A DNA stretch of 64,000 nucleotides from Auanema rhodensis (Eukaryota > Animalia > Nematoda). The stretch spans positions 17,608,001-17,672,000 of the forward strand of contig OZ059899.1 in assembly GCA_964057225.1 (NCBI GenBank). Reading direction: 5' to 3'. The translations under genes were made by a program, and so were the position numbers. Below the pieces are notes generated by a model that was given only the letters and a program-made list of their open reading frames with translations, did no database searches and was not told where the DNA came from. This document shows, piece after piece, positions 3,200 to 27,200 of this stretch; position 1 is the stretch's first letter; each line of letters begins with the position of its first letter.

Positions 3200-4990
3200 C
3201 TCAACATACACTAATGCATCATTTTTCAAACGATCATAACTAATTTTTGTATTAAGAGTTTCTCAATGTAGTATAGTGCATTTGATGCGGATTTTTAAGC
3301 TGCGTCGATCTGTGTTATCAGATTTGCGCTAGCTTAAAAATGCACCGAGATATCAACTGTTATAAGTTCACACTTATATCCTCGATTTTCACCCTGAAGA
3401 ATTAATTTTTTTGTTGAATAACATTGTCCATCGTCTTCGCCTTGAAAAAAGAAATCTAAAAACATCTACTTTTTGTGAAATTATTTTGAAATTTTTCGGG
3501 AAAATTTTTGTCAAAATGTTTTTGAAAGCAATGTTGAGTGTACATGGAAACTCAACATACACTAATGCATCATTTTTCAAACGATCATAACTAATTTTTG
3601 TATCAAGCGTTTCTCAATGTTGTATAGTGCATTCGATGCGGATTTTTAAGCTGCGTCGATCTGTGTTATCAGATTTGCGCTAGCTTAAAAATGCACCGAG
3701 ATATCAACTGATATAAGTTTACACTTATATCCTCGATTTTCACCCTGGAGAATTAATTTTTTCGTTGAATAACATTGTCCATCGTCTTCGCCTTAAAAAA
3801 AGGAATCTAAAAACATCTACTTTTTGTGAAATTATTTTGAAATTTTTAGGGAAAATTTTGGTCAAAATGTTTTTGGAAGCAATGTTGAGTGTACATGGAA
3901 ACTCAACATACACTAATGCATCATTTTTCAAACGATCATGACTAATTTTTGTATTGAGGGTTTCTCAATGTAGTATAGTGCATTCGATGCGGATTTTTAA
4001 GCTGCGTCGATCTGTGTTATCAGATTTGCGCTAGCTTAAAAATGCACCGAGATATCAACTGATATAAGTTCACACTTATATCCTCGATTTTCACCCTGAA
4101 AAATTGATTTTTTCGTTGAATAACATTGTCCATCGTCTTTGCCTTGAAAAAAGGAATCTAAAAACATCTACTTTTTGTGAAATTATTTTGAAATTTTTAG
4201 GGAAAATTTTTGTCAAAATGTTTTTGGAAGCAATGTTGAGTGTACATGGAAACTCAACATACACTAATGCATCATTTTTCAAACGATCATAACTAATTTT
4301 TGTATTAAGAGTTTCTCAATGTAGTATAGTGCATTTGATGCGGATTTTTAAGCTGCGTCGATCTGTGTTATCAGATTTGCGCTAGCTTAAAAATGCACCG
4401 AGATATCAACTGTTATAAGTTCACACTTATATCCTCGATTTTCACCCTGAAGAATTAATTTTTTTGTTGAATAACATTGTCCATCGTCTTCGCCTTGAAA
4501 AAAGAAATCTAAAAACATCTACTTTTTGTGAAATTATTTTGAAATTTTTCGGGAAAATTTTTGTCAAAATGTTTTTGAAAGCAATGTTGAGTGTACATGG
4601 AAACTCAACATACACTAATGCATCATTTTTCAAACGATCATAACTAATTTTTGTATCAAGCGTTTCTCAATGTAGTATAGTGCATTCGATGCGGATTTTT
4701 AAGCTGCGTCGATCTGTGTTATCAGATTTGCGCTAGCTTAAAAATGCACCGAGATATCAACTGATATAAGTTTACACTTATATCCTCGATTTTCACCCTG
4801 GAGAATTAATTTTTTCGTTGAATAACATTGTCCATCGTCTTCGCCTTGAAAAAAGGAATCTAAAAACATCTACTTTTTGTGAAATTATTTTGAAATTTTT
4901 AGGGAAAATTTTGGTCAAAATGTTTTTGGAAGCAATGTTGAGTGTACATGGAAACTCAACATACACTAATGCATCATTTTTCAAACGATC
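3200..4990 (-). repeat. Partial trimeric (1053-bp) repeat of 351-mers
   Basis: The allele run gcatttgatg / actgttata / tttttcggg / ctggag / ttttggtc recurs at +1053 (monomers 3389,3740 vs 4442,4793) with about two SNPs. Confidence 0.7.
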
Positions 4991-5547
4991 ATAACTAATT
5001 TTTGTATCAAGCGTTTCTCAATGTAGTATAGTGCATTCGATGCGGATTTTTAAGCTGCGTCGATCTGTGTTATCAGATTTGCGCTAGCTTAAAAAAGCAC
5101 CGAGATATCAACTGATATAAGTTCACACTTATATCCTCGATTTTCACCCTGAAGAATTAATTTTTTTGTTGAATAACATTGTCCATCGTCTTCGCCTTGA
5201 AAAAAGGAATCTAAAAACATCTACTTTTCGTGAAATTATTTCGAAATTTTTAGGTAAAATTTTTGTCAAAATGTTTTTGGAAGCAATGTTGAGTGTACAT
5301 GGAAACTCAACATACACTAATGCATCATTTTTCAAACGATCATGACTAATTTTTGTATTGAGGGTTTCTCAATGTTGTATAGTGCATTCGATGCGGATTT
5401 TTAAGCTGCGTCGATCTGTGTTATCAGATTTGCGCTAGCTTAAAAAAGCACCGAGATATCAACTGATATAAGTTCACACTTATATCCTCGATTTTCACCC
5501 TGAAGAATTAATTTTTTTGTTGAATAACATTGTCCATCGTCTTCACT

Positions 5548-8500
5548 TTGAAAAAAGGAATCTAAAAACATCTACTTTTTGTAAAATTATTTTGAAATTT
5601 TTAGGGAAAATTTTTGTCAAAATGTTTTTGGAAGCAATGTTGAGTGTACATGGAAACTCAACATACACTAATGCATCATTTTTCAAACGATCATAACTAA
5701 TTTTTGTATCAAGCGTTTCTCAATGTAGTATAGTGCATTCGATGCGGATTTTTAAGCTGCGTCGATCTGTGTTATCAGATTTGCGCTAGCTTAAAAAAGC
5801 ACCGAGATATCAACTGATATAAGTTCACACTTATATCCTCGATTTTCACCCTGAAGAATTAATTTTTTTGTTGAATAACATTGTCCATCGTCTTCGCCTT
5901 GAAAAAAGGAATCTAAAAACATCTACTTTTTGTGAAATTATTTTGAAATTTTTAGGGAAAATTTTTGTCAAAATGTTTTTGGAAGCAATGTTGAGTGTAC
6001 ATGGAAACTCAACATACACTAATACATCATTTTTTAAACGATCATAACTAATTTTTGTATTGAGGGTTTCTCAATGTAGTATAGTGCATTCGATGCGGAT
6101 TTTTAAGCTGCGTCGATCTGTGTTATCAGATTTGCGCTAGCTTAAAAAAGCACCGAGATATCAACTGATATAAGTTCACACTTATATCCTCGATTTTCAC
6201 CCTGAAAAATTGATTTTTTCGTTGAATAACATTGTCCATCGTCTTCGCCTTGAAAAAAGGAATCTAAAAACAACTACTTTTTGTGAAATTATTTCGAAAT
6301 TTTTAGGTAAAATTTTTGTCAAAATGTTTTTGAAAGCAATGTTGAGTGTACATGGAAACTCAACATACACTAATGCATCATTTTTCAAACGATCATGACT
6401 AATTTTTGTATTGAGCGTTTCTCAATGTAGTATAATGCACTCGATGCGGATTTTTAAGCTGCGTCGATCTGTGTTATCAGATTTGCGCTATCTTTAAAAT
6501 GCACCGATATATCAACTGATATAAGTTCACACTTATATCCTCGATTTTCACCCTGAAAATTTGATTTTTTCGTTGAATAACATTGTCCATCGTCTTCGCC
6601 TTGAAAAAAGGAATCTAAAAACATCTACTTTTTGTGAAATTATTTTGAAATTTTTAGGGAAAATTTTGGTCAAAATGTTTTTGGAAGCAATGTTGAGTGT
6701 ACATGGAAACTCAACATACACTAATGCATCATTTTTCAAACGTAAGCTGCGTCGATCTGTGTTATCAGATTTGCGCTAGCTTAAAAAAGCACCGAGATAT
6801 CAACTGATATAAGTTCACACTTATATCCTCGATTTTCACCCTGAAAAATTGATTTTTTCGTTGAATAACATTGTCCATCGTCTTCGCCTTGAAAAAAGGA
6901 ATCTAAAAACAACTACTTTTTGTGAAATTATTTCGAAATTTTTAGGTAAAATTTTTGTCAAAATGTTTTTGAAAGCAATGTTGAGTGTACATGGAAACTC
7001 AACATACACTAATGCATCATTTTTCAAACGATCATGACTAATTTTTGTATTGAGCGTTTCTCAATGTAGTATAATGCACTCGATGCGGATTTTTAAGCTG
7101 CGTCGATCTGTGTTATCAGATTTGCGCTATCTTTAAAATGCACCGATATATCAACTGATATAAGTTCACACTTATATCCTCGATTTTCACCCTGAAAATT
7201 TGATTTTTTCGTTGAATAACATTGTCCATCGTCTTCGCCTTGAAAAAAGGAATCTAAAAACATCTACTTTTTGTGAAATTATTTTGAAATTTTTAGGGAA
7301 AATTTTGGTCAAAATGTTTTTGGAAGCAATGTTGAGTGTACATGGAAACTCAACATACACTAATGCATCATTTTTCAAACGATCATAACTAATTTTTGTA
7401 TTAAGCGTTTCTCAATGTTGTATAGTGCATTCGATGCGGATTTTTAAGCTGCGTCGATCTGTGTTATCAGATTTGCGCTAGCTTAAAAATGCACCGAGAT
7501 ATCAACTGATATAAGTTCACACTTATATCCTCGATTTTCACCCTGAAAAATTGATTTTTTCGTTGAATAACATTGTCCATCGTCTTTGCCTTGAAAAAAG
7601 GAATCTAAAAACAACTACTTTCTGTGAAATTATTTCGAAATTTTTAGGGAAAATTTTTGTCAAAATGTTTTTGGAAGCAATGTTGAGTGTACATGGAAAC
7701 TCAACATACACTAATGCATCATTTTTCAAACGATCATAACTAATTTTTGTATTGAGCGTTTCTCAATGTTGTATAGTGCATTCGATGCGGATTTTTAAGC
7801 TGCGTCGATCTATGTTATCAGATTTGCGCTATCTTAAAAATGCACCGAGATATCAACTGATATAAGTTCACACTTATAATCTCGATTTTCACCCTGAAGA
7901 ATTAATTTTTTTGTTGAATAACATTGTCCATCGTCTTCACCTTGAAAAAAGGAATCTAAAAACATCTACTTTTTGTAAAATTATTTTGAAATTTTTAGGG
8001 AAAATTTTTGTCAAAATGTTTTTGGAAGCAATGTTGAGTGTACATGGAAACTCAACATACACTAATGCATCATTTTTCAAACGATCATAACTAATTTTTG
8101 TATCAAGCGTTTCTCAATGTAGTATAGTGCATTCGATGCGGATTTTTAAGCTGCGTCGATCTGTGTTATCAGATTTGCGCTAGCTTAAAAAAGCACCGAG
8201 ATATCAACTGATATAAGTTCACACTTATATCCTCGATTTTCACCCTGAAGAATTAATTTTTTTGTTGAATAACATTGTCCATCGTCTTCGCCTTGAAAAA
8301 AGGAATCTAAAAACATCTACTTTTTGTGAAATTATTTTGAAATTTTTAGGGAAAATTTTTGTCAAAATGTTTTTGGAAGCAATGTTGAGTGTACATGGAA
8401 ACTCAACATACACTAATACATCATTTTTTAAACGATCATAACTAATTTTTGTATTGAGGGTTTCTCAATGTAGTATAGTGCATTCGATGCGGATTTTTAA

Positions 8501-10585
8501 GCTGCGTCGATCTGTGTTATCAGATTTGCGCTAGCTTAAAAAAGCACCGAGATATCAACTGATATAAGTTCACACTTATATCCTCGATTTTCACCCTGAA
8601 AAATTGATTTTTTCGTTGAATAACATTGTCCATCGTCTTCGCCTTGAAAAAAGGAATCTAAAAACAACTACTTTTTGTGAAATTATTTCGAAATTTTTAG
8701 GTAAAATTTTTGTCAAAATGTTTTTGAAAGCAATGTTGAGTGTACATGGAAACTCAACATACACTAATGCATCATTTTTCAAACGATCATGACTAATTTT
8801 TGTATTGAGCGTTTCTCAATGTAGTATAATGCACTCGATGCGGATTTTTAAGCTGCGTCGATCTGTGTTATCAGATTTGCGCTATCTTTAAAATGCACCG
8901 ATATATCAACTGATATAAGTTCACACTTATATCCTCGATTTTCACCCTGAAAATTTGATTTTTTCGTTGAATAACATTGTCCATCGTCTTCGCCTTGAAA
9001 AAAGGAATCTAAAAACATCTACTTTTTGTGAAATTATTTTGAAATTTTTAGGGAAAATTTTGGTCAAAATGTTTTTGGAAGCAATGTTGAGTGTACATGG
9101 AAACTCAACATACACTAATGCATCATTTTTCAAACGTAAGCTGCGTCGATCTGTGTTATCAGATTTGCGCTAGCTTAAAAAAGCACCGAGATATCAACTG
9201 ATATAAGTTCACACTTATATCCTCGATTTTCACCCTGAAAAATTGATTTTTTCGTTGAATAACATTGTCCATCGTCTTCGCCTTGAAAAAAGGAATCTAA
9301 AAACAACTACTTTTTGTGAAATTATTTCGAAATTTTTAGGTAAAATTTTTGTCAAAATGTTTTTGAAAGCAATGTTGAGTGTACATGGAAACTCAACATA
9401 CACTAATGCATCATTTTTCAAACGATCATGACTAATTTTTGTATTGAGCGTTTCTCAATGTAGTATAATGCACTCGATGCGGATTTTTAAGCTGCGTCGA
9501 TCTGTGTTATCAGATTTGCGCTATCTTTAAAATGCACCGATATATCAACTGATATAAGTTCACACTTATATCCTCGATTTTCACCCTGAAAATTTGATTT
9601 TTTCGTTGAATAACATTGTCCATCGTCTTCGCCTTGAAAAAAGGAATCTAAAAACATCTACTTTTTGTGAAATTATTTTGAAATTTTTAGGGAAAATTTT
9701 GGTCAAAATGTTTTTGGAAGCAATGTTGAGTGTACATGGAAACTCAACATACACTAATGCATCATTTTTCAAACGATCATAACTAATTTTTGTATTAAGC
9801 GTTTCTCAATGTTGTATAGTGCATTCGATGCGGATTTTTAAGCTGCGTCGATCTGTGTTATCAGATTTGCGCTAGCTTAAAAATGCACCGAGATATCAAC
9901 TGATATAAGTTCACACTTATATCCTCGATTTTCACCCTGAAAAATTGATTTTTTCGTTGAATAACATTGTCCATCGTCTTTGCCTTGAAAAAAGGAATCT
10001 AAAAACAACTACTTTCTGTGAAATTATTTCGAAATTTTTAGGGAAAATTTTTGTCAAAATGTTTTTGGAAGCAATGTTGAGTGTACATGGAAACTCAACA
10101 TACACTAATGCATCATTTTTCAAACGATCATAACTAATTTTTGTATTGAGCGTTTCTCAATGTTGTATAGTGCATTCGATGCGGATTTTTAAGCTGCGTC
10201 GATCTATGTTATCAGATTTGCGCTATCTTAAAAATGCACCGAGATATCAACTGATATAAGTTCACACTTATAATCTCGATTTTCACCCTGAAGAATTAAT
10301 TTTTTTGTTGAATAACATTGTCCATCGTCTTCACCTTGAAAAAAGGAATCTAAAAACATCTACTTTTTGTAAAATTATTTTGAAATTTTTAGGGAAAATT
10401 TTTGTCAAAATGTTTTTGGAAGCAATGTTGAGTGTACATGGAAACTCAACATACACTAATGCATCATTTTTCAAACGATCATAACTAATTTTTGTATCAA
10501 GCGTTTCTCAATGTAGTATAGTGCATTCGATGCGGATTTTTAAGCTGCGTCGATCTGTGTTATCAGATTTGCGCTAGCTTAAAAA
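5548..10585 (-). repeat. 7-mer higher-order repeat, 2394 bp (6x351+288), about 2.1 near-identical copies
   Basis: ORF positions 6197/8591, 6548/8942, 6836/9230, 7187/9581 and 7538/9932 all differ by 2394. The truncated-monomer junction recurs at 6742 and 9136. Identity breaks at 8192 vs 10586. Confidence 0.92.
6104..7381 (-). repeat. Out-of-register 639-bp tandem duplication creating a 288-bp monomer (second instance 8498-9775)
   Basis: 6104-6742 (taagctgcg...caaacg) is repeated at 6743-7381. The junction caaacg|taagctg lacks 63 bp of the normal monomer. Confidence 0.9.
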
Positions 10586-11024
10586 TGCACCGAGATATCA
10601 ACTGATATAAGTTTACACTTATATCCTCGATTTTCACCCTGGAGAATCAATTTTTTCGTTGAATAACATTGTCCATCGTCTTCGCCTTGAAAAAAGGAAT
10701 CTAAAAACATCTACTTTTTGTGAAATTATTTTGAAATTTTTAGGGAAAATTTTGGTCAAAATGTTTTTGGAAGCAATGTTGAGTGTACATGGAAACTCAA
10801 CATACACTAATGCATCATTTTTCAAACGATCATGACTAATTTTTGTATTGAGGGTTTCTCAATGTAGTATAGTGCATTCGATGCGGATTTTTAAGCTGCG
10901 TCGATCTGTGTTATCAGATTTGCGCTAGCTTAAAAATGCACCGAGATATCAACTGATATAAGTTCACACTTATATCCTCGATTTTCACCCTGAAAAATTG
11001 ATTTTTTCGTTGAATAACATTGTG

Positions 11025-13544
11025 TACATGTCATGTGTTTACTGCTCTAGCTGGTTTTCAATTTTTATGAGATTTTGCATCATCTTACAACAAATTCAAT
11101 TAAATCTAACATGAAATATTTTTTCGTTTTGAAAAGCATTGAATATCATTGTTCCTTATAATATTGGATTTGAATATTGCTTCGTTAGTTTTATGATTTT
11201 TGCTACTACATGTCATGTGTTTACTGCTCTAGCTGGATTTCAATTTTTATGAGATTTTTCATCATCTTACAACAAATTCAATTGAATCTAACATGAGTTA
11301 TTTTTTCGTTTTGAAAAGCATTGAATATCATTGTTCCTTGTAATATTGGATTTGATTATTGCTTTGTTAGCTTTATGATTTTTGCTACTGTGTAGCTTCA
11401 GTTTGCTGCTCTAGCTGGTTTTCAATTTTTATGAGATATTTCATCATCTTACAACAAATTCAATTGAATCTAACATGAAATATTTTTTCGTTTTGAAAAG
11501 CATTGAATATCATTGTTCCTTGTAATATTGGATTTGATTATTGCTTTGTTAGCTTTATGATTTTTGCTACTGTGTAGCTTCAGTTTGCTGCTCTAGCTGG
11601 TTTTCAATTTTTATGAGATATTTCATCATCTTACAACAAATTCAATTGAATCTAACATGAAATATTTTTTCGTTTTGAAAAGCATTGAATATCATTGTTC
11701 CTTGTAATATTGGATTTGATTATTGCTTTGTTAGCTTCATGATTTTTGCTACTGTATAGCTTCAGTTTGCTGCTCTAGCTGGTTTTCAATTTTTATGAGA
11801 TTTTTCATCATCTTACAAGAAATTCAATTGAATCTAACATGAATTTTTTTTTCGTTTTGAAAAGCATTGAATATCATTGTTCCTTGTAATATTGGATTTG
11901 AATATTGCTTCGTTAGTTTTATGATTTTTGCTACTATATGTCATTTGTTTACTGCTCTAGCTGCTGTTCACTTTTTATGAGATTTTTCATCATCTTACAA
12001 CAAATTCAATTGAATCTAACATGAAATATTTTTTCGTTTTGAAAAGCATTGAATATCATTGTTCCTTATAATATTGGATTTGAATATTGCTTCGTTAGTT
12101 TTATGATTTTTGCTACTGTATAGCTTCAGTTTGCTGCTCTAGCTGGTTTTCAATTTTTATGAGATTTTTCATCATCTTACAACAAATTCAATTGAATCTA
12201 ACATGAGTTATTTTTTCGTTTTGAAAAGCATTGAATATCATTGTTCCTTGTAATATTGGATTTGATTATTGCTTTGTTAGCTTTATGATTTTTGCTACTG
12301 TATAGCTTCAGTTTGCTGCTCTAGCTGGTTTTCAATTTTTATGAGATTTTGCATCATCTTACAACAAATTCAATTAAATCTAACATGAAATATTTTTTCG
12401 TTTTGAAAAGCATTGAATATCATTGTTCCTTATAATATTGGATTTGAATATTGCTTCGATAGTTTTATGATTTTTGCTACTACATGTCATGTGTTTACTG
12501 CTCTAGCTGGTTTTCAATTTTTATGAGATTTTTCATCATCTTACAACAAATTCAATTGAATCTAACATGAGTTATTTTTTCGTTTTGAGAAGCATTGAAT
12601 ATCATTGTTCCTTGTAATATTGGATTTGATTATTGCTTTGTTAGCTTTATGATTTTTGCTACTGTGTAGCTTCAGTTTGCTGCTCTAGCTGGTTTTCAAT
12701 TTTTATGAGATTTTTCATCATCTTACAACAAATTCAATTGAATCTAACATGAAATATTTTTTCGTTTTGAAAAGCATTGAATATCATTGTTCCTTGTAAT
12801 ATTGGATTTGATTATTGCTTTGTTAGCTTTATGATTTTTGCTACTGTATAGCTTCAGTTTGCTGCTCTAGCTGGTTTTCACTTTTTATGAGATTTTTCAT
12901 CATCTTACAACAAATTCAATTGAATCTCATGTGAATTATTTTTTTTTTTAAAAAAGCATTGAATATCATTGTTCCTTATAATATTGGATTTGAATATTGC
13001 TTTGTTAGCTTTAAGATGTTTGCTTATGCATAGCTTCAGTTTGCTGCTCTAGCTGGTTTTCACTTTTTATGAGATTTTTCATCATCTTACAACAAATTCA
13101 ATTGAATCTCATGTGAATTATTTTTTTTTTTAAAAAAGCATTGAATATCATTGTTCCTTATAATATTGGATTTGAATATTGCTTTGTTAGCTTTATGATT
13201 TTTGCTACTGTTTAGCTTCAGTTTGCTGCTCTAGCTGGTTTTCACTTTTTATGAGATTTTTCATCATCTTACAACAAATTCAATTGAATCTCATGTGAAT
13301 TATTTTTTTTTTTAAAAAAGCATTGAATTTCATTGTTTCTTGTAATGATGGATTTGAATATTGCTTTGTTAGCTTTATGATTTTTGCTACTGTTTAGCTT
13401 CAGTTTGCTGCTCTAGCTGGTTTTCAATTTTTATGAGATTTTTCATCATCTTACAACAAATTCAATTGAATCTAACATGAAATATTTTTTCGTTTTGAAA
13501 AGCATTGAATTTCATTGTTTCTTGTAATGATGGATTTGAATATT
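11025..13544 (+). repeat. 182-bp satellite array, orientation 1 (about 13.8 monomers)
   Basis: gctctagctgg occurs at 11044, 11226, 11408... (period 182). No extended similarity to the 351-mer is visible by eye. Confidence 0.97.
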
Positions 13545-13546
13545 CA
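13537..13546. other. Inversion junction in the 182-bp satellite; perfect 10-bp palindrome TGAATATTCA
   Basis: The forward monomer matches to ...gatttgaatatt (13544), then one extra C, then the reverse-complement monomer starts atctcataaaaattg (13546). Confidence 0.95.
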
Positions 13547-16500
13547 TCTCATAAAAATTGAAAACCAGCTAGAGCAGCAAACTGAAGCTATACAGTAGCA
13601 AAAATCATGAAGCTAACAAAGCAATAATCAAATCCAATATTACAAGGAACAATGATATTCAATGCTTTTCAAAACGAAAAAATAACTCATGTTAGATTCA
13701 ATTGAATTTGTTGTAAGATGATGAAAAATCTCATAAAAATTGAAATCCAGCTAGAGCAGTAAACACATGACATGTAGTAGCAAAAATCATAAAACTAACA
13801 AAGCAATATTCAAATCCAATATTACAAGAAACAATTATATTCACTACTATTTGAAACGAAAAAATAGTTCATATTAGATTCAAATGAATTTGTTGCAAGA
13901 TTATGAAAAATCTCATAATAATAGAAAACCAGCTAGAAGCAAACTGAAGCTATGCAGTAGCAAAATCTTAAAACAAACGAAGCAATATTCAAATCAATTA
14001 TTACAAGAAATAATGATATTCAATGCTTTTTAAAAAGAAAAAATAATTCATCTTAGATTCAATTGAATTTGTTGTGAGATTATGAAAAATCTAATAAAAA
14101 GTGAAAACCAGCTAAAGCAGCAAACTGAAGCTATGCAGAAGCAAAAATGTTAAAGGTAACAAAGCAATATTCAAATCCATCATTACAAGAAACAATGAAA
14201 TTCAATGCTTTTTAAAAAAAAAAAATTCATATTAGATTCAAATGAATTTGTTGTCACAGGACGATTATTCTCATAAAAATGGAAAACTAGCTAGAGCAGC
14301 AAACTGAAGCTATACAGTAGCAAAAATCATAAAGCTAACAAAGCAATAATCAAATCCAATATTACAAGGAACAATGATATTCAATGCTTTTCAAAACGAA
14401 AAAATAACTCATGTTAGATTCAATTGAATTTGTTGTAAGATGATGAAAAATCTCATAAAAATTGAAAACCAGCTAGAGCAGTAAACACATGACATGTAGT
14501 AGCAAAAATCATAAAACTATCGAAGCAATATTCAAATCCAATATTATAAGGAACAATGATATTCAATGCTTTTCAAAACGAAAAAATATTTCATGTTAGA
14601 TTCAATTGAATTTGTTGTAAGATGATGAAATATCTCATAAAAATTGAAAACCAGCTAGAGCAGTAAACACATGACATGTAGTAGCAAAAATCATAAAACT
14701 ATCGAAGCAATATTCAAATCCAATATTATAAGGAACAATGATATTCAATGCTTTTCAAAACGAAAAAACATTTCATGTTAGATTTAATTGAATTTGTTGT
14801 AAGATGATGCAAAATCTCATAAAAATTGAAAACCAGCTAGAGCAGCAAACTGAAGCTATACAGTAGCAAAAATCATGAAGCTAACAAAGCAATAATCAAA
14901 TCCAATATTACAAGGAACAATGATATTCAATGCTTTTCAAAACGAAAAAATATTTCATGTTAGATTCAATTGAATTTGTTGTAAGATGATGAAATATCTC
15001 ATAAAAATTGAAAACCAGCTAGAGCAGCAAACTGAAGCTACACAGTAGCAAAAATCATAAAGCTAACAAAGCAATAATCAAATCCAATATTACAAGGAAC
15101 AATGATATTCAATGCTTTTCAAAACGAAAAAATAACTCATGTTAGATTCAATTGAATTTGTTGTAAGATGATGAAAAATCTCATAAAAATTGAAATCCAG
15201 CTAGAGCAGTAAACACATGACATGTAGTAGCAAAAATCATAAAGCTAACAAAGCAATAATCAAATCCAATATTACAAGGAACAATGATATTCAATGCTTT
15301 TCAAAACGAAAAAATAACTCATGTTAGATTCAATTGAATTTGTTGTAAGATGATGAAAAATCTCATAAAAATTGAAATCCAGCTAGAGCAGTAAACACAT
15401 GACATGTAGTAGCAAAAATCATAAAACTAACGAAGCAATATTCAAATCCAATATTATAAGGAACAATGATATTCAATGCTTTTCAAAACGAAAAAATATT
15501 TCATGTTAGATTCAATTGAATTTGTTGTAAGATGATGAAATATCTCATAAAAATTGAAAAACAGCTAGAGCAGTAAACACATGACATGTAGTAGCAAAAA
15601 TCATAAAACTATCGAAGCAATATTCAAATCCAATATTATAAGGAACAATGATATTCAATGCTTTTCAAAACGAAAAAACATTTCATGTTAGATTTAATTG
15701 AATTTGTTGTAAGATGATGCAAAATCTCATAAAAATTGAAAACCAGCTAGAGCAGCAAACTGAAGCTATACAGTAGCAAAAATCATGAAGCTAACAAAGC
15801 AATAATCAAATCCAATATTACAAGGAACAATGATATTCAATGCTTTTCAAAACGAAAAAATATTTCATGTTAGATTCAATTGAATTTGTTGTAAGATGAT
15901 GAAATATCTCATAAAAATTGAAAACCAGCTAGAGCAGCAAACTGAAGCTACACAGTAGCAAAAATCATAAAGCTAACAAAGCAATAATCAAATCCAATAT
16001 TACAAGGAACAATGATATTCAATGCTTTTCAAAACGAAAAAATAACTCATGTTAGATTCAATTGAATTTGTTGTAAGATGATGAAAAATCTCATAAAAAT
16101 TGAAATCCAGCTAGAGCAGTAAACACATGACATGTAGTAGCAAAAATCATAAAGCTAACAAAGCAATAATCAAATCCAATATTACAAGGAACAATGATAT
16201 TCAATGCTTTTCAAAACGAAAAAATAACTCATGTTAGATTCAATTGAATTTGTTGTAAGATGATGAAAAATCTCATAAAAATTGAAATCCAGCTAGAGCA
16301 GTAAACACATGACATGTAGTAGCAAAAATCATAAAACTAACGAAGCAATATTCAAATCCAATATTATAAGGAACAATGATATTCAATGCTTTTCAAAACG
16401 AAAAAATATTTCATGTTAGATTTAATTGAATTTGTTGTAAGATGATGCAAAATCTCATAAAAATTGAAAACCAGCTAGAGCAGCAAACTGAAGCTATACA

Positions 16501-19500
16501 GTAGCAAAAATCATAAAGCTAACAAAGCAATAATCAAATCCAATATTACAAGGAACAATGATATTCAATGCTTTTCAAAACGAAAAAATAACTCATGTTA
16601 GATTCAATTGAATTTGTTGTAAGATGATGAAAAATCTCATAAAAATTGAAAACCAGCTAGAGCAGTAAACACATGACATGTAGTAGCAAAAATCATAAAA
16701 CTATCGAAGCAATATTCAAATCCAATATTATAAGGAACAATGATATTCAATGCTTTTCAAAACGAAAAAATATTTCATGTTAGATTCAATTGAATTTGTT
16801 GTAAGATGATGAAATATCCCATAAAAATTGAAAACCAGCTAGAGCAGTAAACACATGACATGTAGTAGCAAAAATCATAAAACTATCGAAGCAATATTCA
16901 AATCCAATATTATAAGGAACAATGATATTCAATGCTTTTCAAAACGAAAAAACATTTCATGTTAGATTTAATTGAATTTGTTGTAAGATGATGCAAAATC
17001 TCATAAAAATTGAAAACCAGCTAGAGCAGCAAACTGAAGCTATACAGTAGCAAAAATCATGAAGCTAACAAAGCAATAATCAAATCCAATATTACAAGGT
17101 ACAATGATATTCAATGCTTTTCAAAACGAAAAAATATTTCATGTTAGATTCAATTGAATTTGTTGTAAGATGATGAAAAATCTCATAAAAAGTGAACACC
17201 AGCTAGAGCAGCAAACTGAAGCTATGCATAAGCAAACATCTTAAAGCTAACAAAGCAATATTCAAATCCAATATTACAAGGAACAATGATATTCAATGCT
17301 TTTCAAAACGAAAAAATATTTCATGTTAGATTCAATTGAATTTGTTGTAAGATGATGAAAAATCTCATAAAAATTGAAAACCAGCTAGAGCAGCAAACTG
17401 AAGCTATACAGTAGCAAAAATCATAAAGCTGACAAAGCAATATTCAAATCCATCATTACAAGAAACAATGAAATTCAATGCTTTTTTAAAAAAAAAAATA
17501 ATTCACATGAGATTCAAATGAATTTGTTGTAAGATGATGAAAAATCTCATAAAAATTGAAAACTAGCTAGAGCAGTAAACACAGGGCATGTAGTAGCAAA
17601 AATCTTAAAGCAAACAAAGCAATATTCAAATCCAATATTACAAGAAACATAGAAATTCAATGCTTTTTAAAACGAAAAAATAGTTCATGTTAGATTCAAA
17701 TGAATTTGTTGTAAGATGATGAAAAATCTCATAAAAATTGAAAACCAGCTAGAGCAGCAAACTGAAGCTATACAGTAGCAAAAATCATAAAGCTAACAAA
17801 GCAATATTCAAATCCAATATTACAAGGAACAATGATATTCAATGCTTTTCAAAACGAAAAAATATTTCATGTTAGATTCAAATGAATTTGTTGTAAGATG
17901 ATGAAAAATCTCATAAAAATTGAAAACCAGCTAGAGCAGCAAACTGAAGCTATACAGTAGCAAAAATCATAAAGCTAACAAAGCAATATTCAAATCCATC
18001 ATTACAAGAAACAATGAAATTCAATGCTTTTTTAAAAAAAAAAATAATTCACATGAGATTCAAATGAATTTGTTGTAAGATGATGAAAAATCTCATAAAA
18101 ATTGAAAACCAGCTAGAGCAGCAAACTGAAGCTATACAGTAGCAAAAATCATAAAGCTAACAAAGCAATATTCAAATCCAATATTACAAGGAACAATGAT
18201 ATTCAATGCTTTTCAAAACGAAAAAATATTTCATGTTAGATTCAATTGAATTTGTTGTAAGATGATGAAAAATCTCATAAAAAGTGAAAACCAGCTAGAG
18301 CAGCAAACTGAAGCTATGCATAAGCAAACATCTTAAAGCTAACAAAGCAATATTCAAATCCAATATTACAAGGAACAATGATATTCAATGCTTTTCAAAA
18401 CGAAAAAATAATTCATGTTAGATTCAATTGAATTTGTTGTAAGATGATGAAAAATCTCATAAAAATTGAAAACCAGCTAGAGCAGCAAACTGCAGCTATA
18501 CAGTAGCAAACATCTTAAAGCTAACAAAGCAATAATCAAATCCAATATTACAAGGAACAATGATATTCAATGCTTTTCAAAACGAAAAAATAATTCATGT
18601 TAGATTCAATTGAATTTGTTGTAAGATGATGAAAAATCTCATAAAAATTGAAAACCAGCTAGAGCAGTAAACACATGACATGTAGTAGCAAAAATCATAA
18701 AACTAACAAAGCAATATTCAAATCCAATATTATAAGGAACAATGATATTCAATGCTTTTCAAAACGAAAAAATATTTCATGTTAGATTCAATAGAATTTG
18801 TTGTAAGATGATGAAAAATCTCATAAAAATTGAAAACCAGCTAGAGCAGCAAACTGAAGCTATACAGTAGCAAAAATCATAAAGCTAACAAAGCAATATT
18901 CAAATCCATCATTACAAGAAACAATGAAATTCAATGCTTTTTTAAAAAAAAAAATAATTCACATGAGATTCAAATGAATTTGTTGTAAGATGATGAAAAA
19001 TCTCATAAAAATTGAAAACTAGCTAGAGCAGTAAACACAGGGCATGTAGTAGCAAAAATCATAAAGCTAACAAAGCAATATTCAAATCCAATATTACAAG
19101 GAACAATGATATTCAATGCTTTTCAAAACGAAAAAATATTTCATGTTAGATTCAATTGAATTTGTTGTAAGATGATGAAAAATCTCATAAAAAGTGAAAA
19201 CCAGCTAGAGCAGCAAACTGAAGCTATACAGTAGCAAAAATCATAAAGCTAACAAAGCAATATTCAAATCCAATATTACAAGGAACAATGATATTCAATG
19301 CTTTTCAAAACGAAAAAATATTTCATGTTAGATTCAAATGAATTTGTTGTAAGATGATGAAAAATCTCATAAAAATTGAAAACCAGCTAGAGCAGTAAAC
19401 ACATGACATGTAGTAGCAAAAATCATAAAACTAACAAAGCAATATTCAAATCCAATATTATAAGGAACAATGATATTCAATGCTTTTCAAAACGAAAAAA

Positions 19501-22500
19501 TATTTCATGTTAGATTCAATAGAATTTGTTGTAAGATGATGAAAAATCTCATAAAAATTGAAAACCAGCTAGAGCAGCAAACTGAAGCTATGCATAAGCA
19601 AACATCTTAAAGCTAACAAAGCAATATTCAAATCCAATATTACAAGAAACATAGAAATTCAATGCTTTTTAAAACGAAAAAATAGTTCATGTTAGATTCA
19701 AATGAATTTGTTGTAAGATGATGAAAAATCTCATAAAAATTGAAAACCAGCTAGAGCAGCAAACTGAAGCTATACAGTAGCAAAAATCATAAAGCTAACA
19801 AAGCAATATTCAAATCCATCATTACAAGAAACAATGAAATTCAATGCTTTTTTAAAAAAAAAAATAATTCACATGAGATTCAAATGAATTTGTTGTAAGA
19901 TGATGAAAAATCTCATAAAAATTGAAAACCAGCTAGAGCAGCAAACTGAAGCTATACAGTAGCAAAAATCATAAAGCTAACAAAGCAATATTCAAATCCA
20001 ATATTACAAGGAACAATGATATTCAATGCTTTTCAAAACGAAAAAATATTTCATGTTAGATTCAATTGAATTTGTTGTAAGATGATGAAAAATCTCATAA
20101 AAAGTGAAAACCAGCTAGAGCAGCAAACTGAAGCTATGCATAAGCAAACATCTTAAAGCTAACAAAGCAATATTCAAATCCAATATTACAAGGAACAATG
20201 ATATTCAATGCTTTTCAAAACGAAAAAATAATTCATGTTAGATTCAATTGAATTTGTTGTAAGATGATGAAAAATCTCATAAAAATTGAAAACCAGCTAG
20301 AGCAGCAAACTGCAGCTATACAGTAGCAAACATCTTAAAGCTAACAAAGCAATAATCAAATCCAATATTACAAGGAACAATGATATTCAATGCTTTTCAA
20401 AACGAAAAAATAATTCATGTTAGATTCAATTGAATTTGTTGTAAGATGATGAAAAATCTCATAAAAATTGAAAACCAGCTAGAGCAGCAAACTGAAGCTA
20501 TACAGTAGCAAAAATCATAAAGCTAACAAAGCAATATTCAAATCCATCATTACAAGAAACAATGAAATTCAATGCTTTTTTAAAAAAAAAAATAATTCAC
20601 ATGAGATTCAAATGAATTTGTTGTAAGATGATGAAAAATCTCATAAAAATTGAAAACTAGCTAGAGCAGTAAACACAGGGCATGTAGTAGCAAAAATCTT
20701 AAAGCAAACAAAGCAATATTCAAATCCAATATTACAAGAAACATAGAAATTCAATGCTTTTTAAAACGAAAAAATAGTTCATGTTAGATTCAAATGAATT
20801 TGTTGTAAGATGATGAAAAATCTCATAAAAATTGAAAACCAGCTAGAGCAGCAAACTGAAGCTATACAGTAGCAAAAATCATAAAGCTAACAAAGCAATA
20901 TTCAAATCCAATATTACAAGGAACAATGATATTCAATGCTTTTCAAAACGAAAAAATATTTCATGTTAGATTCAATTGAATTTGTTGTAAGATGATGAAA
21001 AATCTCATAAAAAGTGAAAACCAGCTAGAGCAGCAAACTGAAGCTATGCATAAGCAAACATCTTAAAGCTAACAAAGCAATATTCAAATCCAATATTACA
21101 AGGAACAATGATATTCAATGCTTTTCAAAACGAAAAAATAATTCATGTTAGATTCAATTGAATTTGTTGTAAGATGATGAAAAATCTCATAAAAATTGAA
21201 AACCAGCTAGAGCAGCAAACTGCAGCTATACAGTAGCAAACATCTTAAAGCTAACAAAGCAATAATCAAATCCAATATTACAAGGAACAATGATATTCAA
21301 TGCTTTTCAAAACGAAAAAATAATTCATGTTAGATTCAATTGAATTTGTTGTAAGATGATGAAAAATCTCATAAAAATTGAAAACCAGCTAGAGCAGTAA
21401 ACACATGACATGTAGTAGCAAAAATCATAAAACTAACAAAGCAATATTCAAATCCAATATTATAAGGAACAATGATATTCAATGCTTTTCAAAACGAAAA
21501 AATATTTCATGTTAGATTCAATAGAATTTGTTGTAAGATGATGAAAAATCTCATAAAAATTGAAAACCAGCTAGAGCAGTAAACACAGGGCATGTAGTAG
21601 CAAAAATCATAAAGCTAACAAAGCAATATTCAAATCCAATATTACAAGGAACAATGATATTCAATGCTTTTCAAAACGAAAAAATATTTCATGTTAGATT
21701 CAATTGAATTTGTTGTAAGATGATGAAAAATCTCATAAAAATTGAAAACCAGCTAGAGCAGCAAACTGAAGCTATGCATATGCAAACATCTTAAAGCTAA
21801 CAAAGCAATATTCAAATCCAATATTATAAGGAACAATGATATTCAATGCTTTTCAAAACGAAAAAATAATTCATGTTAGATTCAATTGAATTTGTTGTAA
21901 GATGATGAAAAATCTCATAAAAATTGAAAACCAGCTAGAGCAGCAAACTGAAGCTAAACAGTAGCAAAAATCATAAAGCTAACAAAGCAATATTCAAATC
22001 CATCATTACAAGAAACAATGAAATTCAATGCTTTTTTAAAAAAAAAAATAATTCACATGAGATTCAAATGAATTTGTTGTAAGATGATGAAAAATCTCAT
22101 AAAAATTGAAAACTAGCTAGAGCAGTAAACACAGGGCATGTAGTAGCAAAAATCTTAAAGCAAACAAAGCAATATTCAAATCCAATATTACAAGAAATAA
22201 TGATATTCAATGCTTTTTAAAAAGCAAAAATAATTCATCTTAGATTCAATTGAATTTGTTGTGAGATTATGAAAAATCTAATAAAAAGTGAAAACCAGCT
22301 AGAGCAGCAAACTGAAGCTATGCATAAGCAAACATCTTAAAGCTAACAAAGCAATATTCAAATCCAATATTACAAGGAACAATGATATTCAATGCTTTTC
22401 AAAACGAAAAAATAATTCATGTTAGATTCAATTGAATTTGTTGTCACAGGACGATTATTCTCATAAAAATTGAAAACTAGCTAGAGCAGTAAACACAGGG

Positions 22501-23810
22501 CATGTAGTAGCAAAAATCTTAAAGCAAACAAAGCAATATTCAAATCCAATATTACAAGAAACAATGATATTCACTAGTATTTGAAACGAAAAAATAGTTC
22601 ATGTTAGATTCAAATGAATTTGTTGTAAGATGATGAAAAATCTCATAAAAATTGAAAACCAGCTAGAGCAGCAAACTGAAGCTATACAGTAGCAAAAATC
22701 ATAAAGCTAACAAAGCAATATTCAAATCCAATATTACAAGGAACAATGATATTCAATGCTTTTCAAAACGAAAAAATATTTCATGTTAGATTCAATTGAA
22801 TTTGTTGTAAGATGATGAAAAATCTCATAAAAATTGAAAACCAGCTAGAGCAGCAAACTGAAGCTATACAGTAGCAAAAATCATAAAACTAACGAAGCAA
22901 TATTCAAATCCAATATTATAAGGAACAATGATATTCAATGCTTTTCAAAACGAAAAAATATTTCATGTTAGATTCAATTGAATTTGTTGTAAGATGATGA
23001 AAAATCTCATAAAAATTGAAAACCAGCTAGAGCAGCAAACTGAAGCTATGCATAAGCAAACATCTTAAAGCTAACAAAGCAATATTCAAATCCAATATTA
23101 CAAGGAACAATGATATTCAATGCTTTTCAAAACGAAAAAATATTTCATGTTAGATTCAATTGAATTTGTTGTAAGATGATGAAAAATCTCATAAAAATTG
23201 AAAACCAGCTTGAGCAGCAAACTGAAGCTATACAGTAGCAAAAATCATAAAACTAACGAAGCAATATTCAAAACCATCATTACAAGAAACAATGAAATTC
23301 AATGCTTTTTTAAAAAAAAAATAATTCACATGAGATTCAATTGAATTTGTTGTAAGATGATGAAAAATCTCATAAAAAGTGAAAACCAGCTAGAGCAGCA
23401 AACTGAAGCTATGCATAAGCAAACATCTTAAAGCTAACAAAGCAATATTCAAATCCAATATTACAAGGAACAATGATATTCAATGCTTTTCAAAACGAAA
23501 AAATATTTCATGTTAGATTCAATTGAATTTGTTGTAAGATGATGAAAAATCTCATAAAAATTGAAAACCAGCTAGAGCAGCAAACTGAAGCTAAACAGTA
23601 GCAAAAATCATAAAGCTAACAAAGCAATATTCAAATCCATCATTACAAGAAACAATGAAATTCAATGCTTTTTTAAAAAAAAAATAATTCACATGAGATT
23701 CAATTGAATTTGTTGTAAGATGATGAAAAATCTCATAAAAAGTGAAAACCAGCTAGAGCAGCAAACTGAAGCTATGCATAAGCAAACATCTTAAAGCTAA
23801 CAAAGCAATA
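13546..23810 (-). repeat. 182-bp satellite array, orientation 2 (about 56.4 monomers)
   Basis: Reverse complement of the 11025-13544 monomer (ccagctagagcagc...), period 182. It ends at ...caaagcaata (23810). Confidence 0.97.
14520..16420 (-). repeat. 5-mer (910-bp) higher-order duplication of 182-mers
   Basis: The rare allele cgaaaaaaca is at 14761 and 15671, and flanking allele runs match at +910. Confidence 0.85.
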
Positions 23811-23936
23811 GCTAGCGCAAATCTGATAACACAGATCGACGCAGCTTAAAAATCCGCATCGAATGCACTATACTACATTGAGAAACGCTTAATACAAAAA
23901 TTAGTTATGATCGTTTGAAAAAAGATGCATTAGTGT

Positions 23937-23964
23937 ATGTTGAGTTTCCATGTACACTCAACAT
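23937..23964. other. Example of the 28-bp dyad ATGTTGAGT-N10-ACTCAACAT present in each 351-mer
   Basis: Perfect 9-bp inverted repeat with a 10-nt spacer, read directly from the sequence. Confidence 0.92.
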
Positions 23965-24146
23965 TGCTTCCAAAAACATTTTGACAAAAATTTTTCCGAA
24001 AAATTTCAAAATAATTTCGCAAAAAGTAGATGTTTTTAGATTTCTTTTTTCAAGGCAAAGACGATGGACAAAGTTATTCAACGAAAAAATTAATTCTGCA
24101 GGGTGAAAATCGAGGATATATGTGTGAACTTATATCAGTTGATATC

Positions 24147-24213
24147 TCGGTGCATTTTTAAGCTAGCGCAAATCTGATAACACAGATCGACGCAGCTTAA
24201 AAATCCGCATCGA
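24147..24213. other. Example of the 67-nt interrupted inverted repeat present in each 351-mer
   Basis: tcggtgc ATTTTTAAGCT a gcg caa ATCTG ataaca CAGAT cga cgc AGCTTAAAAAT cc gcatcga; 11-bp perfect stem 24154-24164 with 24194-24204. Confidence 0.9.
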
Positions 24214-27200
24214 ATGCACTATACTACATTGAGAAACGCTTAATACAAAACTTAGTTATGATCGTTTGAAAAATGATGCATTAGCGTATGTTGAGTTTCC
24301 ATGTACACTCAACATTGCTTCCAAAAACATTTTTACAAAAATTTTTCCGAAAAATTTCGAAATAATTTCGCAAAAAGTAGATGTTTTCAGATTTCTTTTT
24401 TCAAGGCAAAGACGATGGACATTGTTATTCAACGAAAAAATTGATTCTGCAGGGTGAAAATCGAGGATATAAGTGTGAACTTATATCAGTTGATATCTCG
24501 GTGCATTTTTAAGCTAGCGCAAATCTGATAACACAGATCGACGCAGCTTAAAAATCCGCATCGATTGCACTATACTACATTGAGAAACGCTTAATACAAA
24601 AATTAGTTATGATCGTTTGAAAAAAGATGCATTAGTGTATGTTGAGTTTCCATGTACACTCAACATTGCTTCCAAAAACATTTTGACAAAAATTTTTCCG
24701 AAAAATTTCAAAATAATTTCGCAAAAAGTAGATGTTTTTAGATTTCTTTTTTCAAGGCAAAGACGATGGACAAAGTTATTCAACGAAAAAATTAATTCTG
24801 CAGGGTGAAAATCGAGGATATAAGTGTGAACTTATATCAGTTGATATCTCGGTGCATTTTTAAGCTAGCGCAAATCTGATAACACAGATCGACGCAGCTT
24901 AAAAATCCGCATCGAATGCACTATACTACATTGAGAAACGCTTAATACAAAAATTAGTTATGATCGTTTGAAAAAAGATGCATTAGTGTATGTTGAGTTT
25001 CCATGTACACTCAACATTGCTTCCAAAAACATTTTGACAAAAATTTTTCCGAAAAATTTCAAAATAATTTCGCAAAAAGTAGATGTTTTTAGATTTCTTT
25101 TTTCAAGGCAAAGACGATGGACAAAGTTATTCAACGAAAAAATTAATTCTGCAGGGTGAAAATCGAGGATATAAGTGTGAACTTATATCAGTTGATATCT
25201 CGGTGCATTTTTAAGCTAGCGCAAATCTGATAACACAGATCGACGCAGCTTAAAAATCCGCATCGAATGCACTATACTACATTGAGAAACGCTTAATACA
25301 AAACTTAGTTATGATCGTTTGAAAAATGATGCATTAGTGTATGTTGAGTTTCCATGTACACTCAACATTGCTTCCAAAAACATTTTGACAAAAATTTTTC
25401 CGAAAAATTTCAAAATAATTTCGCAAAAAGTAGATGTTTTTAGATTTCTTTTTTCAAGGCAAAGACGATGGACAAAGTTATTCAACGAAAAAATTAATTC
25501 TGCAGGGTGAAAATCGAGGATATAAGTGTGAACTTATATCAGTTGATATCTCGGTGCATTTTTAAGCTAGCGCAAATCTGATAACACAGATCGACGCAGC
25601 TTAAAAATCCGCATCGAATGCACTATACTACATTGAGAAACGCTTAATACAAAACTTAGTTATGATCGTTTGAAAAATGATGCATTAGTGTATGTTGAGT
25701 TTCCATGTACACTCAACATTGCTTCCAAAAACATTTTGACAAAAATTTTTCCGAAAAATTTCAAAATAATTTCGCAAAAAGTAGATGTTTTTAGATTTCT
25801 TTTTTCAAGGCAAAGACGATGGACAAAGTTATTCAACGAAAAAATTAATTCTGCAGGGTGAAAATCGAGGATATAAGTGTGAACTTATATCAGTTGATAT
25901 CTCGGTGCATTTTTAAGCTAGCGCAAATCTGATAACACAGATCGACGCAGCTTAAAAATCCGCATCGAATGCACTATACAACATTGAGAAACGCTCAATA
26001 CAAAAATTAGTTATGATCGTTTGAAAAATGATGCATTAGTGTATGTTGAGTTTCCATGTACACTCAACATTGCTTCCAAAAACATTTTGACAAAAATTTT
26101 TCCGAAAAATTTCAAAATAATTTCGCAAAAAGTAGATGTTTTTAGATTTCTTTTTTCAAGGCAAAGACGATGGACAAAGTTATTCAACGAAAAAATTAAT
26201 TCTGCAGGGTGAAAATCGAGGATATAAGTGTGAACTTATATCAGTTGATATCTCGGTGCATTTTTAAGCTAGCGCAAATCTGATAACACAGATCGACGCA
26301 GCTTAAAAATTCGCATCGAATGCACTATACAACATTGAGAAACGCTCAATACAAAAATTAGTTATGATCGTTTGAAAAATGATGCATTAGTGTATGTTGA
26401 GTTTCCATGTACACTCAACATTGCTTCCAAAAACATTTTGACAAAAATTTTTCCGAAAAATTTCAAAATAATTTCGCAAAAAGTAGATGTTTTTAGATTT
26501 CTTTTTTCAAGGCAAAGACGATGGACAAAGTTATTCAACGAAAAAATTAATTCTGCAGGGTGAAAATCGAGGATATAAGTGTGAACTTATATCAGTTGAT
26601 ATCTCGGTGCATTTTTAAGCTAGCGCAAATCTGATAACACAGATCGACGCAGCTTAAAAATCCGCATCGAATGCACTATACTACATTGAGAAACGCTTAA
26701 TACAAAACTTAGTTATGATCGTTTGAAAAATGATGCATTAGTGTATGTTGAGTTTCCATGTACACTCAACATTGCTTCCAAAAACATTTTGACAAAAATT
26801 TTTCCGAAAAATTTCAAAATAATTTCGCAAAAAGTAGATGTTTTTAGATTTCTTTTTTCAAGGCAAAGACGATGGACAAAGTTATTCAACGAAAAAATTA
26901 ATTCTGCAGGGTGAAAATCGAGGATATAAGTGTGAACTTATATCAGTTGATATCTCGGTGCATTTTTAAGCTAGCGCAAATCTGATAACACAGATCGACG
27001 CAGCTTAAAAATCCGCATCGAATGCACTATACTACATTGAGAAACGCTTAATACAAAAATTAGTTATGATCGTTTGAAAAAAGATGCATTAGTGTATGTT
27101 GAGTTTCCATGTACACTCAACATTGCTTCCAAAAACATTTTGACAAAAATTTTTCCGAAAAATTTCAAAATAATTTCGCAAAAAGTAGATGTTTTTAGAT

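What the first reader, a model, noticed from the sequence alone, without database searches (positions are those of the whole stretch)
13537..23815. Breakpoints at 13544 and 23810 fall in the same AATATT site: in-place 10.3-kb inversion with a 3-4 bp staggered overlap
Seen: the forward block stops at ...gatttgaaTATT (13544). The reverse complement of the far end (23810 backwards) begins TATTgctttgttagc, which is the in-register continuation with TATT duplicated. Haplotypes agree at domain level: 12850-13544 carries ctcatgtgaatt after caattg, the poly-T/A tract, gcttatgcata and ctgtttagc, which match 23200-23810 rather than the adjacent 13546-17100. Inference: 13546-23810 was flipped in place after a staggered break. 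Flipping it back restores one unidirectional array joined to the right 351 array, so the 351 strand switch would be a separate event. Caveat: the exact restored monomer haplotype is not seen elsewhere in the window.
Basis: partly seen in the sequence, partly recalled or inferred. Interest (0 to 1): 0.8.

Follow-up and report, generated by a model that had tools for sequence, protein, structure and literature searches.

The report
Old 10-kb inversion inside a satellite
A 10.3-kb stretch of a 182-bp tandem repeat was most likely cut out at one repeat-internal AATATT site, turned round and rejoined; it is a cleanly resolved but ordinary kind of rearrangement in repeat DNA, and it is older than a 164-kb duplication that copied both scars.

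Summary
The forward 182-bp array ends at ...GATTTGAATATT (13544). The reverse complement of the far end of the reversed array (23810 backwards) starts TATTGCTTTG, so the two ends are in register with a 4-nt TATT overlap.

Tests that support the two ends once being neighbours:
- The last 3-4 monomers before 13544 match the far end of the reversed block best: rank 1 of 54 windows here, rank 1 of 76 in a second copy.
- There is no mirror similarity across 13545, so this is not a fold-back.
- A same-strand sister array 3.2 Mb away carries the predicted neighbour order. Its last complete monomer in the fetched stretch is identical to the far-end monomer.

New facts:
- Both joints occur exactly twice in the genome, here and 164 kb downstream.
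- The two reversed blocks are 99.9% identical over their collinear parts, so the event predates a recent large duplication.
- The flanking 351-bp arrays belong to two subfamilies about 4.5% apart, with no mirror order.

Weak points:
- The second break must coincide with the 182/351 border.
- The predicted ancestral joint is absent from the assembly.
- One further array border lies in the same 9-mer.
- Reads could not be shown to bridge the joint.

Verdict: in-place inversion about 0.6; known kind; modest interest. The scan has already noted many strand switches in other satellites of this genome.

The parts
1..11023 (+). 351-bp satellite array, subfamily 'alpha', forward orientation
   Evidence: TRF period 351, 96% matches. 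About 16/351 differences from the right-hand 351 array and no mirror order.
11024..11036 (.). Left 351/182 border (i), ...AACATTGT|G|TACATGTCATGTG; unique in the genome; probably a later deletion joint
   Evidence: L01-L09 are collinear with M78-M86 of module 2, whose own left border differs.
11037..13544 (+). Forward 182-bp array L (13.8 monomers), ending in AATATT
12817..13362 (+). Monomers L10-L12 of the rare 'CTCATGTGAATT' family next to the joint
   Evidence: Motif map; clade with S01/S03/T01/T03/M87/M95, support 0.95
13539..13545 (.). Joint J1: AATATT (13539-13544) plus orphan C (13545); forward 182-mer phase 182 meets reversed 182-mer phase 77
   Evidence: The exact 29-mer occurs twice in the genome.
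13546..23810 (-). Reversed 182-bp array S' (56.4 monomers), the block inferred to have been flipped
13805..14344 (-). Divergent monomers S53-S55 (two of them 179 nt), typical of an old array edge
   Evidence: Distance to consensus 18-22, against 1-14 for most monomers and up to 24 for a few mid-array types; lengths
23263..23806 (-). Monomers S01-S03, the far end of the flipped block and the best match of the L end
23807..23816 (.). Joint J2: AATA (23807-23810, reverse complement of TATT) followed by GCTAGC of the 351 unit; 1-nt shared A at 23810
   Evidence: The exact 30-mer occurs twice in the genome.
23810..64000 (-). 351-bp satellite array, subfamily 'beta', reverse orientation; runs on to about 146.7 kb from the window start

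Best explanation
A once unidirectional 182-bp satellite array was broken at a 4-nt staggered cut inside AATATT. The other break was at, or just beyond, the array's distal edge next to a reverse-oriented 351-bp array. The intervening block was rejoined backwards by end joining. It now measures 10.3 kb here and 14.3 kb in the sister copy. Filling in the stagger left TATT on both products: ...AATATT at 13544 and AATA at 23807-23810. One orphan C was added at 13545, and the far joint shares 1 nt. The rearranged module (351+ / 182+ / 182- / 351-) was later duplicated about 164 kb downstream, and both copies then changed length by unequal exchange in steps of 182 nt. Shown: the joint sequences, the phase match, the similarity ranks, the two copies and the sister-array order. 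Inferred: the former contiguity, the staggered cut, end joining and the order of events.
For: Phase and 4-nt overlap. The last 3-4 monomers before J1 match the far end of the flipped block best: rank 1 of 54 at k=3 in module 1, and rank 1 of 76 and 1 of 75 in module 2. The present neighbours across J1 are 2.5-3.7 times more distant. In module 2, M95 = T01 with 0 differences, M94 is within 1 of T04/T06 and M96 within 2 of T07. The rare CTCATGTGAATT family forms one clade, support 0.95; in the forward blocks it is found only in L10-L12 and, in M, in the last 11 of 97 monomers (M87, M95). There is no mirror similarity of the arms at J1. Sister array L028 (C7:20.79 Mb, one orientation) has the order I-d-N: L028_13 is 7 differences from M96, L028_14 is 7 from M97 and L028_15 is identical to T01. 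This is the adjacency that flipping back predicts. J1 and J2 each occur exactly twice, in the same order and orientation. S and T are collinear at 99.9%, so one event gave both joints before the duplication. The edge-like divergent monomers S53-S55 fit a former array edge.
Against: A strict two-break flip needs break 2 within about 1 nt of the earlier 182/351 border, unless sequence was lost there. The predicted ancestral joint is not in the assembly. Border (ii) of module 2 also lies in TTGAATATT, so a preferred break site could explain part of the phase match. In module 1 the rank falls with larger windows (3 of 53 at k=4, 7 of 51 at k=6), and L12's closest partners in S are mid-array monomers. 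The rare family also occurs in other arrays and includes S53/T75 near J1. Reads were short contigs only, so bridging of J1 was not shown.
Confidence: 0.6

Rival explanations
1. Replicative template switching (break-induced or MMBIR type). A strand copying the forward array stalled or broke at AATATT and re-primed on the opposite strand at phase 77 of a downstream monomer. It copied back to the broken end, overlapping it by 4 nt, ran off, and re-primed in a reverse-oriented 351-bp array. This gives the same former contiguity but a copy-based mechanism, and the 351 border at J2 arises in the same event.
For: It explains why the reversed block stops exactly where the forward block stopped and why J2 sits exactly at a 182/351 transition with 1-nt microhomology. 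The orphan base at J1 fits. Earlier notes of the scan report many fold-back or template-switch scars in this genome's satellites (unchecked leads).
Against: No retained forward copy of the reversed block and no duplicated segment is seen in 264 kb. There is no microhomology at J1. The 351 arrays on the two sides are old, distinct subfamilies. The junction sequences alone cannot separate this from cut-and-rejoin.
Confidence: 0.17
2. Two unrelated joints. J2 is an old border where a 351-bp array meets the first monomer of a 182-bp array, and J1 is a separate head-to-head fusion or a breakpoint of a larger inversion. The phase match then reflects chance or a preferred break site at AATATT.
For: A third border, (ii), starts at TTGAATATT, 5 nt from the J2 break, so the M block is exactly 97 monomers plus 9 nt. 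Chance of register within +/-4 nt is about 5%. Array edges often hold divergent monomer types, and arrays on C5 carry dimers 94-95% identical to the L12-L13 dimer near their starts.
Against: It does not predict the rank-1 similarity of the L/M end to the S/T start in both modules, M95 = T01, or the I-d-N order in sister array L028. No symmetric fold-back at AATATT exists in the genome. Other strand switches of the family lie at other phases: the C5 forward blocks run at least 22 nt past AATATT, and the C7:20.80 Mb centre is near phase 35. The monomer has no significant secondary structure, z = 0.03.
Confidence: 0.17
3. Assembly artefact: a chimeric or fold-back read or a mis-join created the strand switch.
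For: Satellite blocks are hard to assemble. I could not show reads bridging J1. The two near-identical modules could in principle be an assembly duplication.
Against: J1 and J2 recur in a second module with a different left flank (only 62 nt shared to the left of J1) and a different block length, 14.3 against 10.3 kb. Short contigs from four runs in three studies cover the bins at J1, and no loose end is listed at 13544/13545.
Confidence: 0.06

Closest known systems
Cut-and-rejoin chromosomal inversions with staggered breaks (short duplications in inverted orientation at the two breakpoints, as described for Drosophila inversions; from my own knowledge, not checked in a paper here)
   Same: Two joints. 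Flipping the block back restores register. A short sequence (TATT) is present at both ends in inverted orientation. Filler base and minimal microhomology are typical of end joining.
   Different: The duplication is only 4 nt and lies in a palindromic hexamer, so it is weak evidence on its own. The event is inside a satellite array. The second break sits at an array border, and no uninverted allele is available.
Fold-back inverted duplications / strand switches in satellite arrays
   Same: An orientation switch inside a tandem array, with a clean joint and 0-3 nt of homology.
   Different: Here the arms next to the joint are not mirror copies, the two sides are at different monomer phases (182 and 77), and the block has a second, in-register end 10.3 kb away.
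Inversions within centromeric or pericentromeric satellite arrays of complete assemblies (human alpha satellite, Arabidopsis CEN180; own knowledge)
   Same: Kilobase-scale flipped blocks inside otherwise unidirectional arrays, later carried along by array expansion or duplication.
   Different: The probable host is a holocentric nematode, and the DNA is probably germline-restricted tandem repeat, if the genome is Auanema rhodense (bioRxiv 10.64898/2026.08.27.747507). Here both breakpoints are resolved to the base.

Membership tests
Two-break in-place inversion | Flipping the block restores collinearity (monomer phase) at the proximal joint | tested here: met
   L ends at anchor offset 9 and the flipped S starts at offset 5, a 4-nt overlap with strict 182-nt register on both sides
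Two-break in-place inversion | Sequences at the two ends of the block were former neighbours (local haplotype continuity) | tested here: met
   Rank 1 of 54 and 1 of 76 windows; M95 = T01; sister array L028 has the predicted I-d-N order
Two-break in-place inversion | The distal joint also restores a plausible ancestral adjacency | tested here: inconclusive
   The ancestral join would be 182-mer phase 77 to 351-beta at GCTAGC. That junction is absent from the genome. It needs the break at the array border or loss of sequence.
Two-break in-place inversion | Uninverted arrangement seen in another individual or species | not testable with these tools
Staggered-break signature | Same short sequence at both breakpoints in inverted orientation | tested here: met
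   TATT at 13541-13544 and AATA at 23807-23810. The four bases fit the 182-mer 4/4 and the 351-mer 1/4.
Fold-back inverted duplication | Arms flanking the switch are mirror copies of each other | tested here: not met
   The five full monomers nearest J1 on each side (M93-M97 v T74-T78) differ by 6-29 of 182 when paired in mirror order; the two sides are at phases 182 and 77
NAHR inversion between inverted repeats | Homologous inverted repeats at the two breakpoints | tested here: not met
   J1 joins 182-mer phases 182 and 77 with an orphan C. J2 joins a 182-mer to a 351-mer. Homology is at most 1 nt.
Recurrent break hotspot at AATATT | Independent block ends of the family cluster at the site | tested here: inconclusive
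   One further border, (ii), lies in TTGAATATT. Border (i) is near phase 33, J1-right at phase 77, and the C5 and C7:20.80 Mb switches are elsewhere. There is no AATATT-centred fold-back in the genome.

The most novel reading that the evidence does not exclude
AATATT (or TTGAATATT) in the 182-bp unit is a preferred site of 4-nt staggered double-strand cleavage in this probably germline-restricted satellite, for example by a type II topoisomerase or another nuclease. Three of the five 182-mer block ends in module 2 lie in this 9-mer, so the satellite's block architecture would be shaped by site-specific breakage rather than by random breaks.
Probability: 0.1. Interest if true: 0.5.

Novelty: new member of a known kind. 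Interest (0 to 1): 0.3.

Why it matters
It gives a base-resolved example of how a block inside a tandem-repeat array comes to lie backwards. It has a datable order of events: inversion, then a 164-kb duplication, then unequal exchange in 182-nt steps. The setting is probably the massively expanded, soma-eliminated repeat blocks of Auanema rhodense. It can serve as a marker for the history of these blocks and as a check on assembly quality. It does not reveal a new mechanism.

Tried and rejected
1. Simple palindrome. The left 351/182 border is not the mirror of J2, and the 351 arms are different subfamilies without mirror order. Rejected.

2. Fold-back at J1. There is no mirror similarity. Rejected.

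3. Similarity of L00-L09 and M01-M07 to S38-S52 and T61-T73, with up to 864 nt exact, looked like evidence against the flip. The same higher-order repeat is shared exactly (up to 950 nt) with arrays 2-3 Mb away, so it is uninformative.

4. Predicted ancestral joint: not in the genome.

5. Hotspot scan with GATTTGAATATT followed by a non-G base. It was swamped by unique-DNA hits and by a C5 subfamily that carries an A there, and the C7 rows were cut off.

6. My guess that the C5 strand switch is a symmetric fold-back at the 12-nt palindrome ATTCAATTGAAT: no match at up to 3 mismatches, so its phase is known only roughly from BLAST coordinates.

7. AATATT-centred fold-back: none in the genome.

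8. Hairpin at the break site: the monomer fold is no better than shuffles.

9. Reads. The 1.8-kb request gave only 60-222-nt contigs.

11. Paper search for 351/182-bp satellites: nothing.

Full report
**Layout.** The window holds four tandem arrays:
- a 351-bp satellite in forward orientation, 1-11023;
- a 182-bp satellite in forward orientation, 11037-13544 (L, 13.8 monomers);
- the same 182-bp satellite reversed, 13546-23810 (S', 56.4 monomers);
- the 351-bp satellite reversed, 23810-64000.

The window is G000:C7:17608001-17672000 of a 180.9-Mb assembly. Earlier notes of the scan name the nematode Auanema rhodense. A preprint describes a 180-Mb germline genome of seven chromosomes for that species, made mostly of tandem repeats of 167-504 nt that are eliminated from somatic cells (bioRxiv 10.64898/2026.08.27.747507).

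**The observation.**
- L ends ...GATTTGAATATT at 13544, followed by an orphan C at 13545, and the reversed monomers start with ATCTCAT.
- The far end reads ...CAAAGCAATA up to 23810 and then GCTAGCGCAAATC of the 351 unit.
- Its reverse complement begins TATTGCTTTGTTAGC.
- With a 20-nt anchor, all monomers are in strict 182-nt register. L stops at anchor offset 9 and the flipped block starts at offset 5, a 4-nt overlap.
- The four bases AATA at 23807-23810 fit the 182-mer 4/4 and the 351-mer 1/4.

Two independent breaks would be in register within +/-4 nt about 5% of the time.

**Not a palindrome and not a fold-back.**
- The left 351/182 border (...AACATTGT|G|TACATGTC..., about 11023-11037) differs in both repeat phases from the mirror of J2.
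- The 351 monomers on the left (alpha) and on the right (beta) differ by about 16 of 351 and show no mirror order. Left-left and right-right comparisons are much closer.
- Monomers flanking J1 are unlike one another in mirror order: the five full monomers nearest J1 on each side (M93-M97 against T74-T78) differ by 6-29 of 182.
- The two sides of J1 are at phases 182 and 77.

**A second copy.** The exact J1 29-mer and J2 30-mer each occur twice in the genome, here and at C7:17785750 and C7:17800019. I fetched 200 kb to the right of the window and mapped 264 kb:

| Segment | Size or position |
|---|---|
| 351+ | 11 kb |
| L | 2.5 kb |
| J1 | |
| S' | 10.3 kb |
| J2 | |
| 351- | 123 kb |
| clean 351-/351+ switch | 146714 from the window start |
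| 351+ | 13 kb |
| border (ii) | |
| M (182+) | 97 monomers, 17.8 kb |
| J1 | |
| T' (182-) | 78 monomers, 14.3 kb |
| J2 | |
| 351- | at least 72 kb |

- S and T are collinear. The first 12 monomers differ by 1 mismatch and 1 gap in 2180 nt. The tails differ by 2 mismatches plus a 546-nt (three-monomer) gap.
- The whole rearranged module was therefore duplicated recently, and both copies then changed length by whole monomers.
- To the left of J1 the copies share only 62 nt.
- L01-L09 equal M78-M86, and L13 is a hybrid of a B-type 5' part and the M97 3' part.
- Module 1 looks like a shortened derivative. Its unique left border (i) is probably a later deletion joint.

**Were the L/M end and the S/T start neighbours?**
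- I phased and aligned all 244 monomers.
- Using a symmetric nearest-monomer distance between windows, the last 3-4 monomers before J1 find their best partner in the reversed block at its far end. The rank is 1 of 76 and 1 of 75 in module 2, and 1 of 54 at k=3 in module 1.
- In module 1 the rank weakens to 3 of 53 at k=4 and 7 of 51 at k=6.
- The present neighbours across J1 are 2.5-3.7 times more distant.
- In module 2, M95 equals T01 exactly, M94 is within 1 of T04/T06 and M96 within 2 of T07.
- The CTCATGTGAATT family forms a clade with support 0.95. It contains L10-L12, M87, M95, S01, S03, T01 and T03, some mid-array T monomers, and S53/T75. In M it occurs only among the last 11 of 97 monomers.

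**A counter-signal that fell away.** L00-L09 and M01-M07 share up to 864 nt exactly with S38-S52 and T61-T67, which now lie beside J1. The same higher-order repeat is shared exactly, up to 950 nt, with arrays 2-3 Mb away. It therefore says nothing about local adjacency.

**An independent check from a sister array.** Array L028 (C7:20790085-20793205) runs in one orientation. Three consecutive monomers there match the restored order M96-M97|T01. They show 7, 7 and 0 differences. A monomer identical to T01 follows an M97-like monomer there, which is the adjacency that flipping back predicts. Inside M, the same d-type monomer is followed by another type.

**Hotspot test.**
- Border (ii) of module 2 reads ...GCGGATTGTTAAG|TTGAATATTGCTTCG, so the M block is 97 monomers plus 9 nt. 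A third block end lies 5 nt from the J2 break.
- Against a hotspot: border (i) is near phase 33 and J1-right at phase 77.
- Other forward-to-reverse switches of the family lie elsewhere. They are at C5 about 955,040 and about 1,629,430, and at C7 about 20,801,620. The C5 forward blocks continue at least 22 nt past AATATT, and the C7 centre is near phase 35.
- No AATATT-centred fold-back exists in the genome.
- The monomer folds no better than shuffles.

One extra hit among about seven other breakpoints is close to chance expectation.

**What remains open.** Alternatively, some sequence was lost there. The divergent, edge-like monomers S53-S55 suggest that this end was indeed an old array edge. 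The predicted ancestral joint is absent from the assembly. A copy-based template-switch route gives the same joints and explains the border coincidence naturally, and I cannot separate the two routes.

**Reads.** Only short Logan contigs (60-222 nt) were available, from 4 runs in 3 studies under 3 coded organism labels. They cover the bins at J1, and no loose end is listed at 13544/13545. They also carry the private divergent monomers at 99% identity or more, for example 13958-14179 in X4. Bridging of J1 could not be demonstrated.

**Verdict.** The reading as an in-place inversion with a 4-nt staggered break is the best-supported one, at about 0.6. It is older than, and was copied by, a 164-kb duplication. 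The 351 strand difference is unrelated to it. This is a well-resolved member of a known kind of rearrangement, in a genome where the scan has already noted many satellite strand switches.

Noticed in passing
window 13544/23810 and C7:17785762/17800033 (164 kb downstream, outside the window): The whole module 351+/182+/182-/351- is present twice with identical J1 and J2. The reversed blocks are 99.9% identical apart from whole-monomer length changes (10.3 against 14.3 kb), and the forward block is 2.5 kb here against 17.8 kb there.
   Followed up: yes
C7:17754714 (146714 from window start; locus L026): Clean 351-/351+ orientation switch (...GTATGTTGAGT|CTTCGCCTTG...), unique in the genome. It may be the junction of the module duplication.
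   Followed up: partly
C7:17767920 (locus L027): Border (ii), 351-alpha to 182-mer at ...GTTAAG|TTGAATATTGC. The M block is therefore exactly 97 monomers plus 9 nt, with both ends in the same 9-mer.
   Followed up: partly
window 6455-7030 and 8849-9424: Two places in the left 351 array with a 288-nt period, that is, monomers lacking 63 nt, spaced 2394 nt apart. This suggests a higher-order repeat of about 7 units.
   Followed up: no
G000:C5:953332-955732, about 1246176, and 1623181-1630121: A diverged subfamily of the 182-mer (AATATT followed by A). Its arrays end in forward-to-reverse switches with a 681-nt reversed tail. The variant ...GTTATGAGATTTT marks the last forward monomer at three sites, so this junction also seems to be multi-copy. 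No sequence could be fetched.
   Followed up: partly
G000:C7:20801487-20801755: Another strand switch of the 182-mer family. It matches the J1 probe on both strands at about 80%, and its centre is near monomer phase 35.
   Followed up: no
L028-L031 (C7:19.63 and 20.79 Mb): Arrays 2-3 Mb away share exact higher-order repeat blocks of up to 950 nt with the M and T blocks, so there has been very recent exchange or dispersal of array segments along the chromosome.
   Followed up: partly
every 182-bp monomer, e.g. window 13460-13471: A perfect 12-nt palindrome ATTCAATTGAAT lies inside the repeat unit. No strand switch centred on it was found at up to 3 mismatches.
   Followed up: partly
window 12700-14500 in runs X1-X6: Word depth in run X1 is about 50-100 times that of the other runs. 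This could reflect a germline-rich against a somatic sample if the repeat is eliminated from the soma.
   Followed up: no
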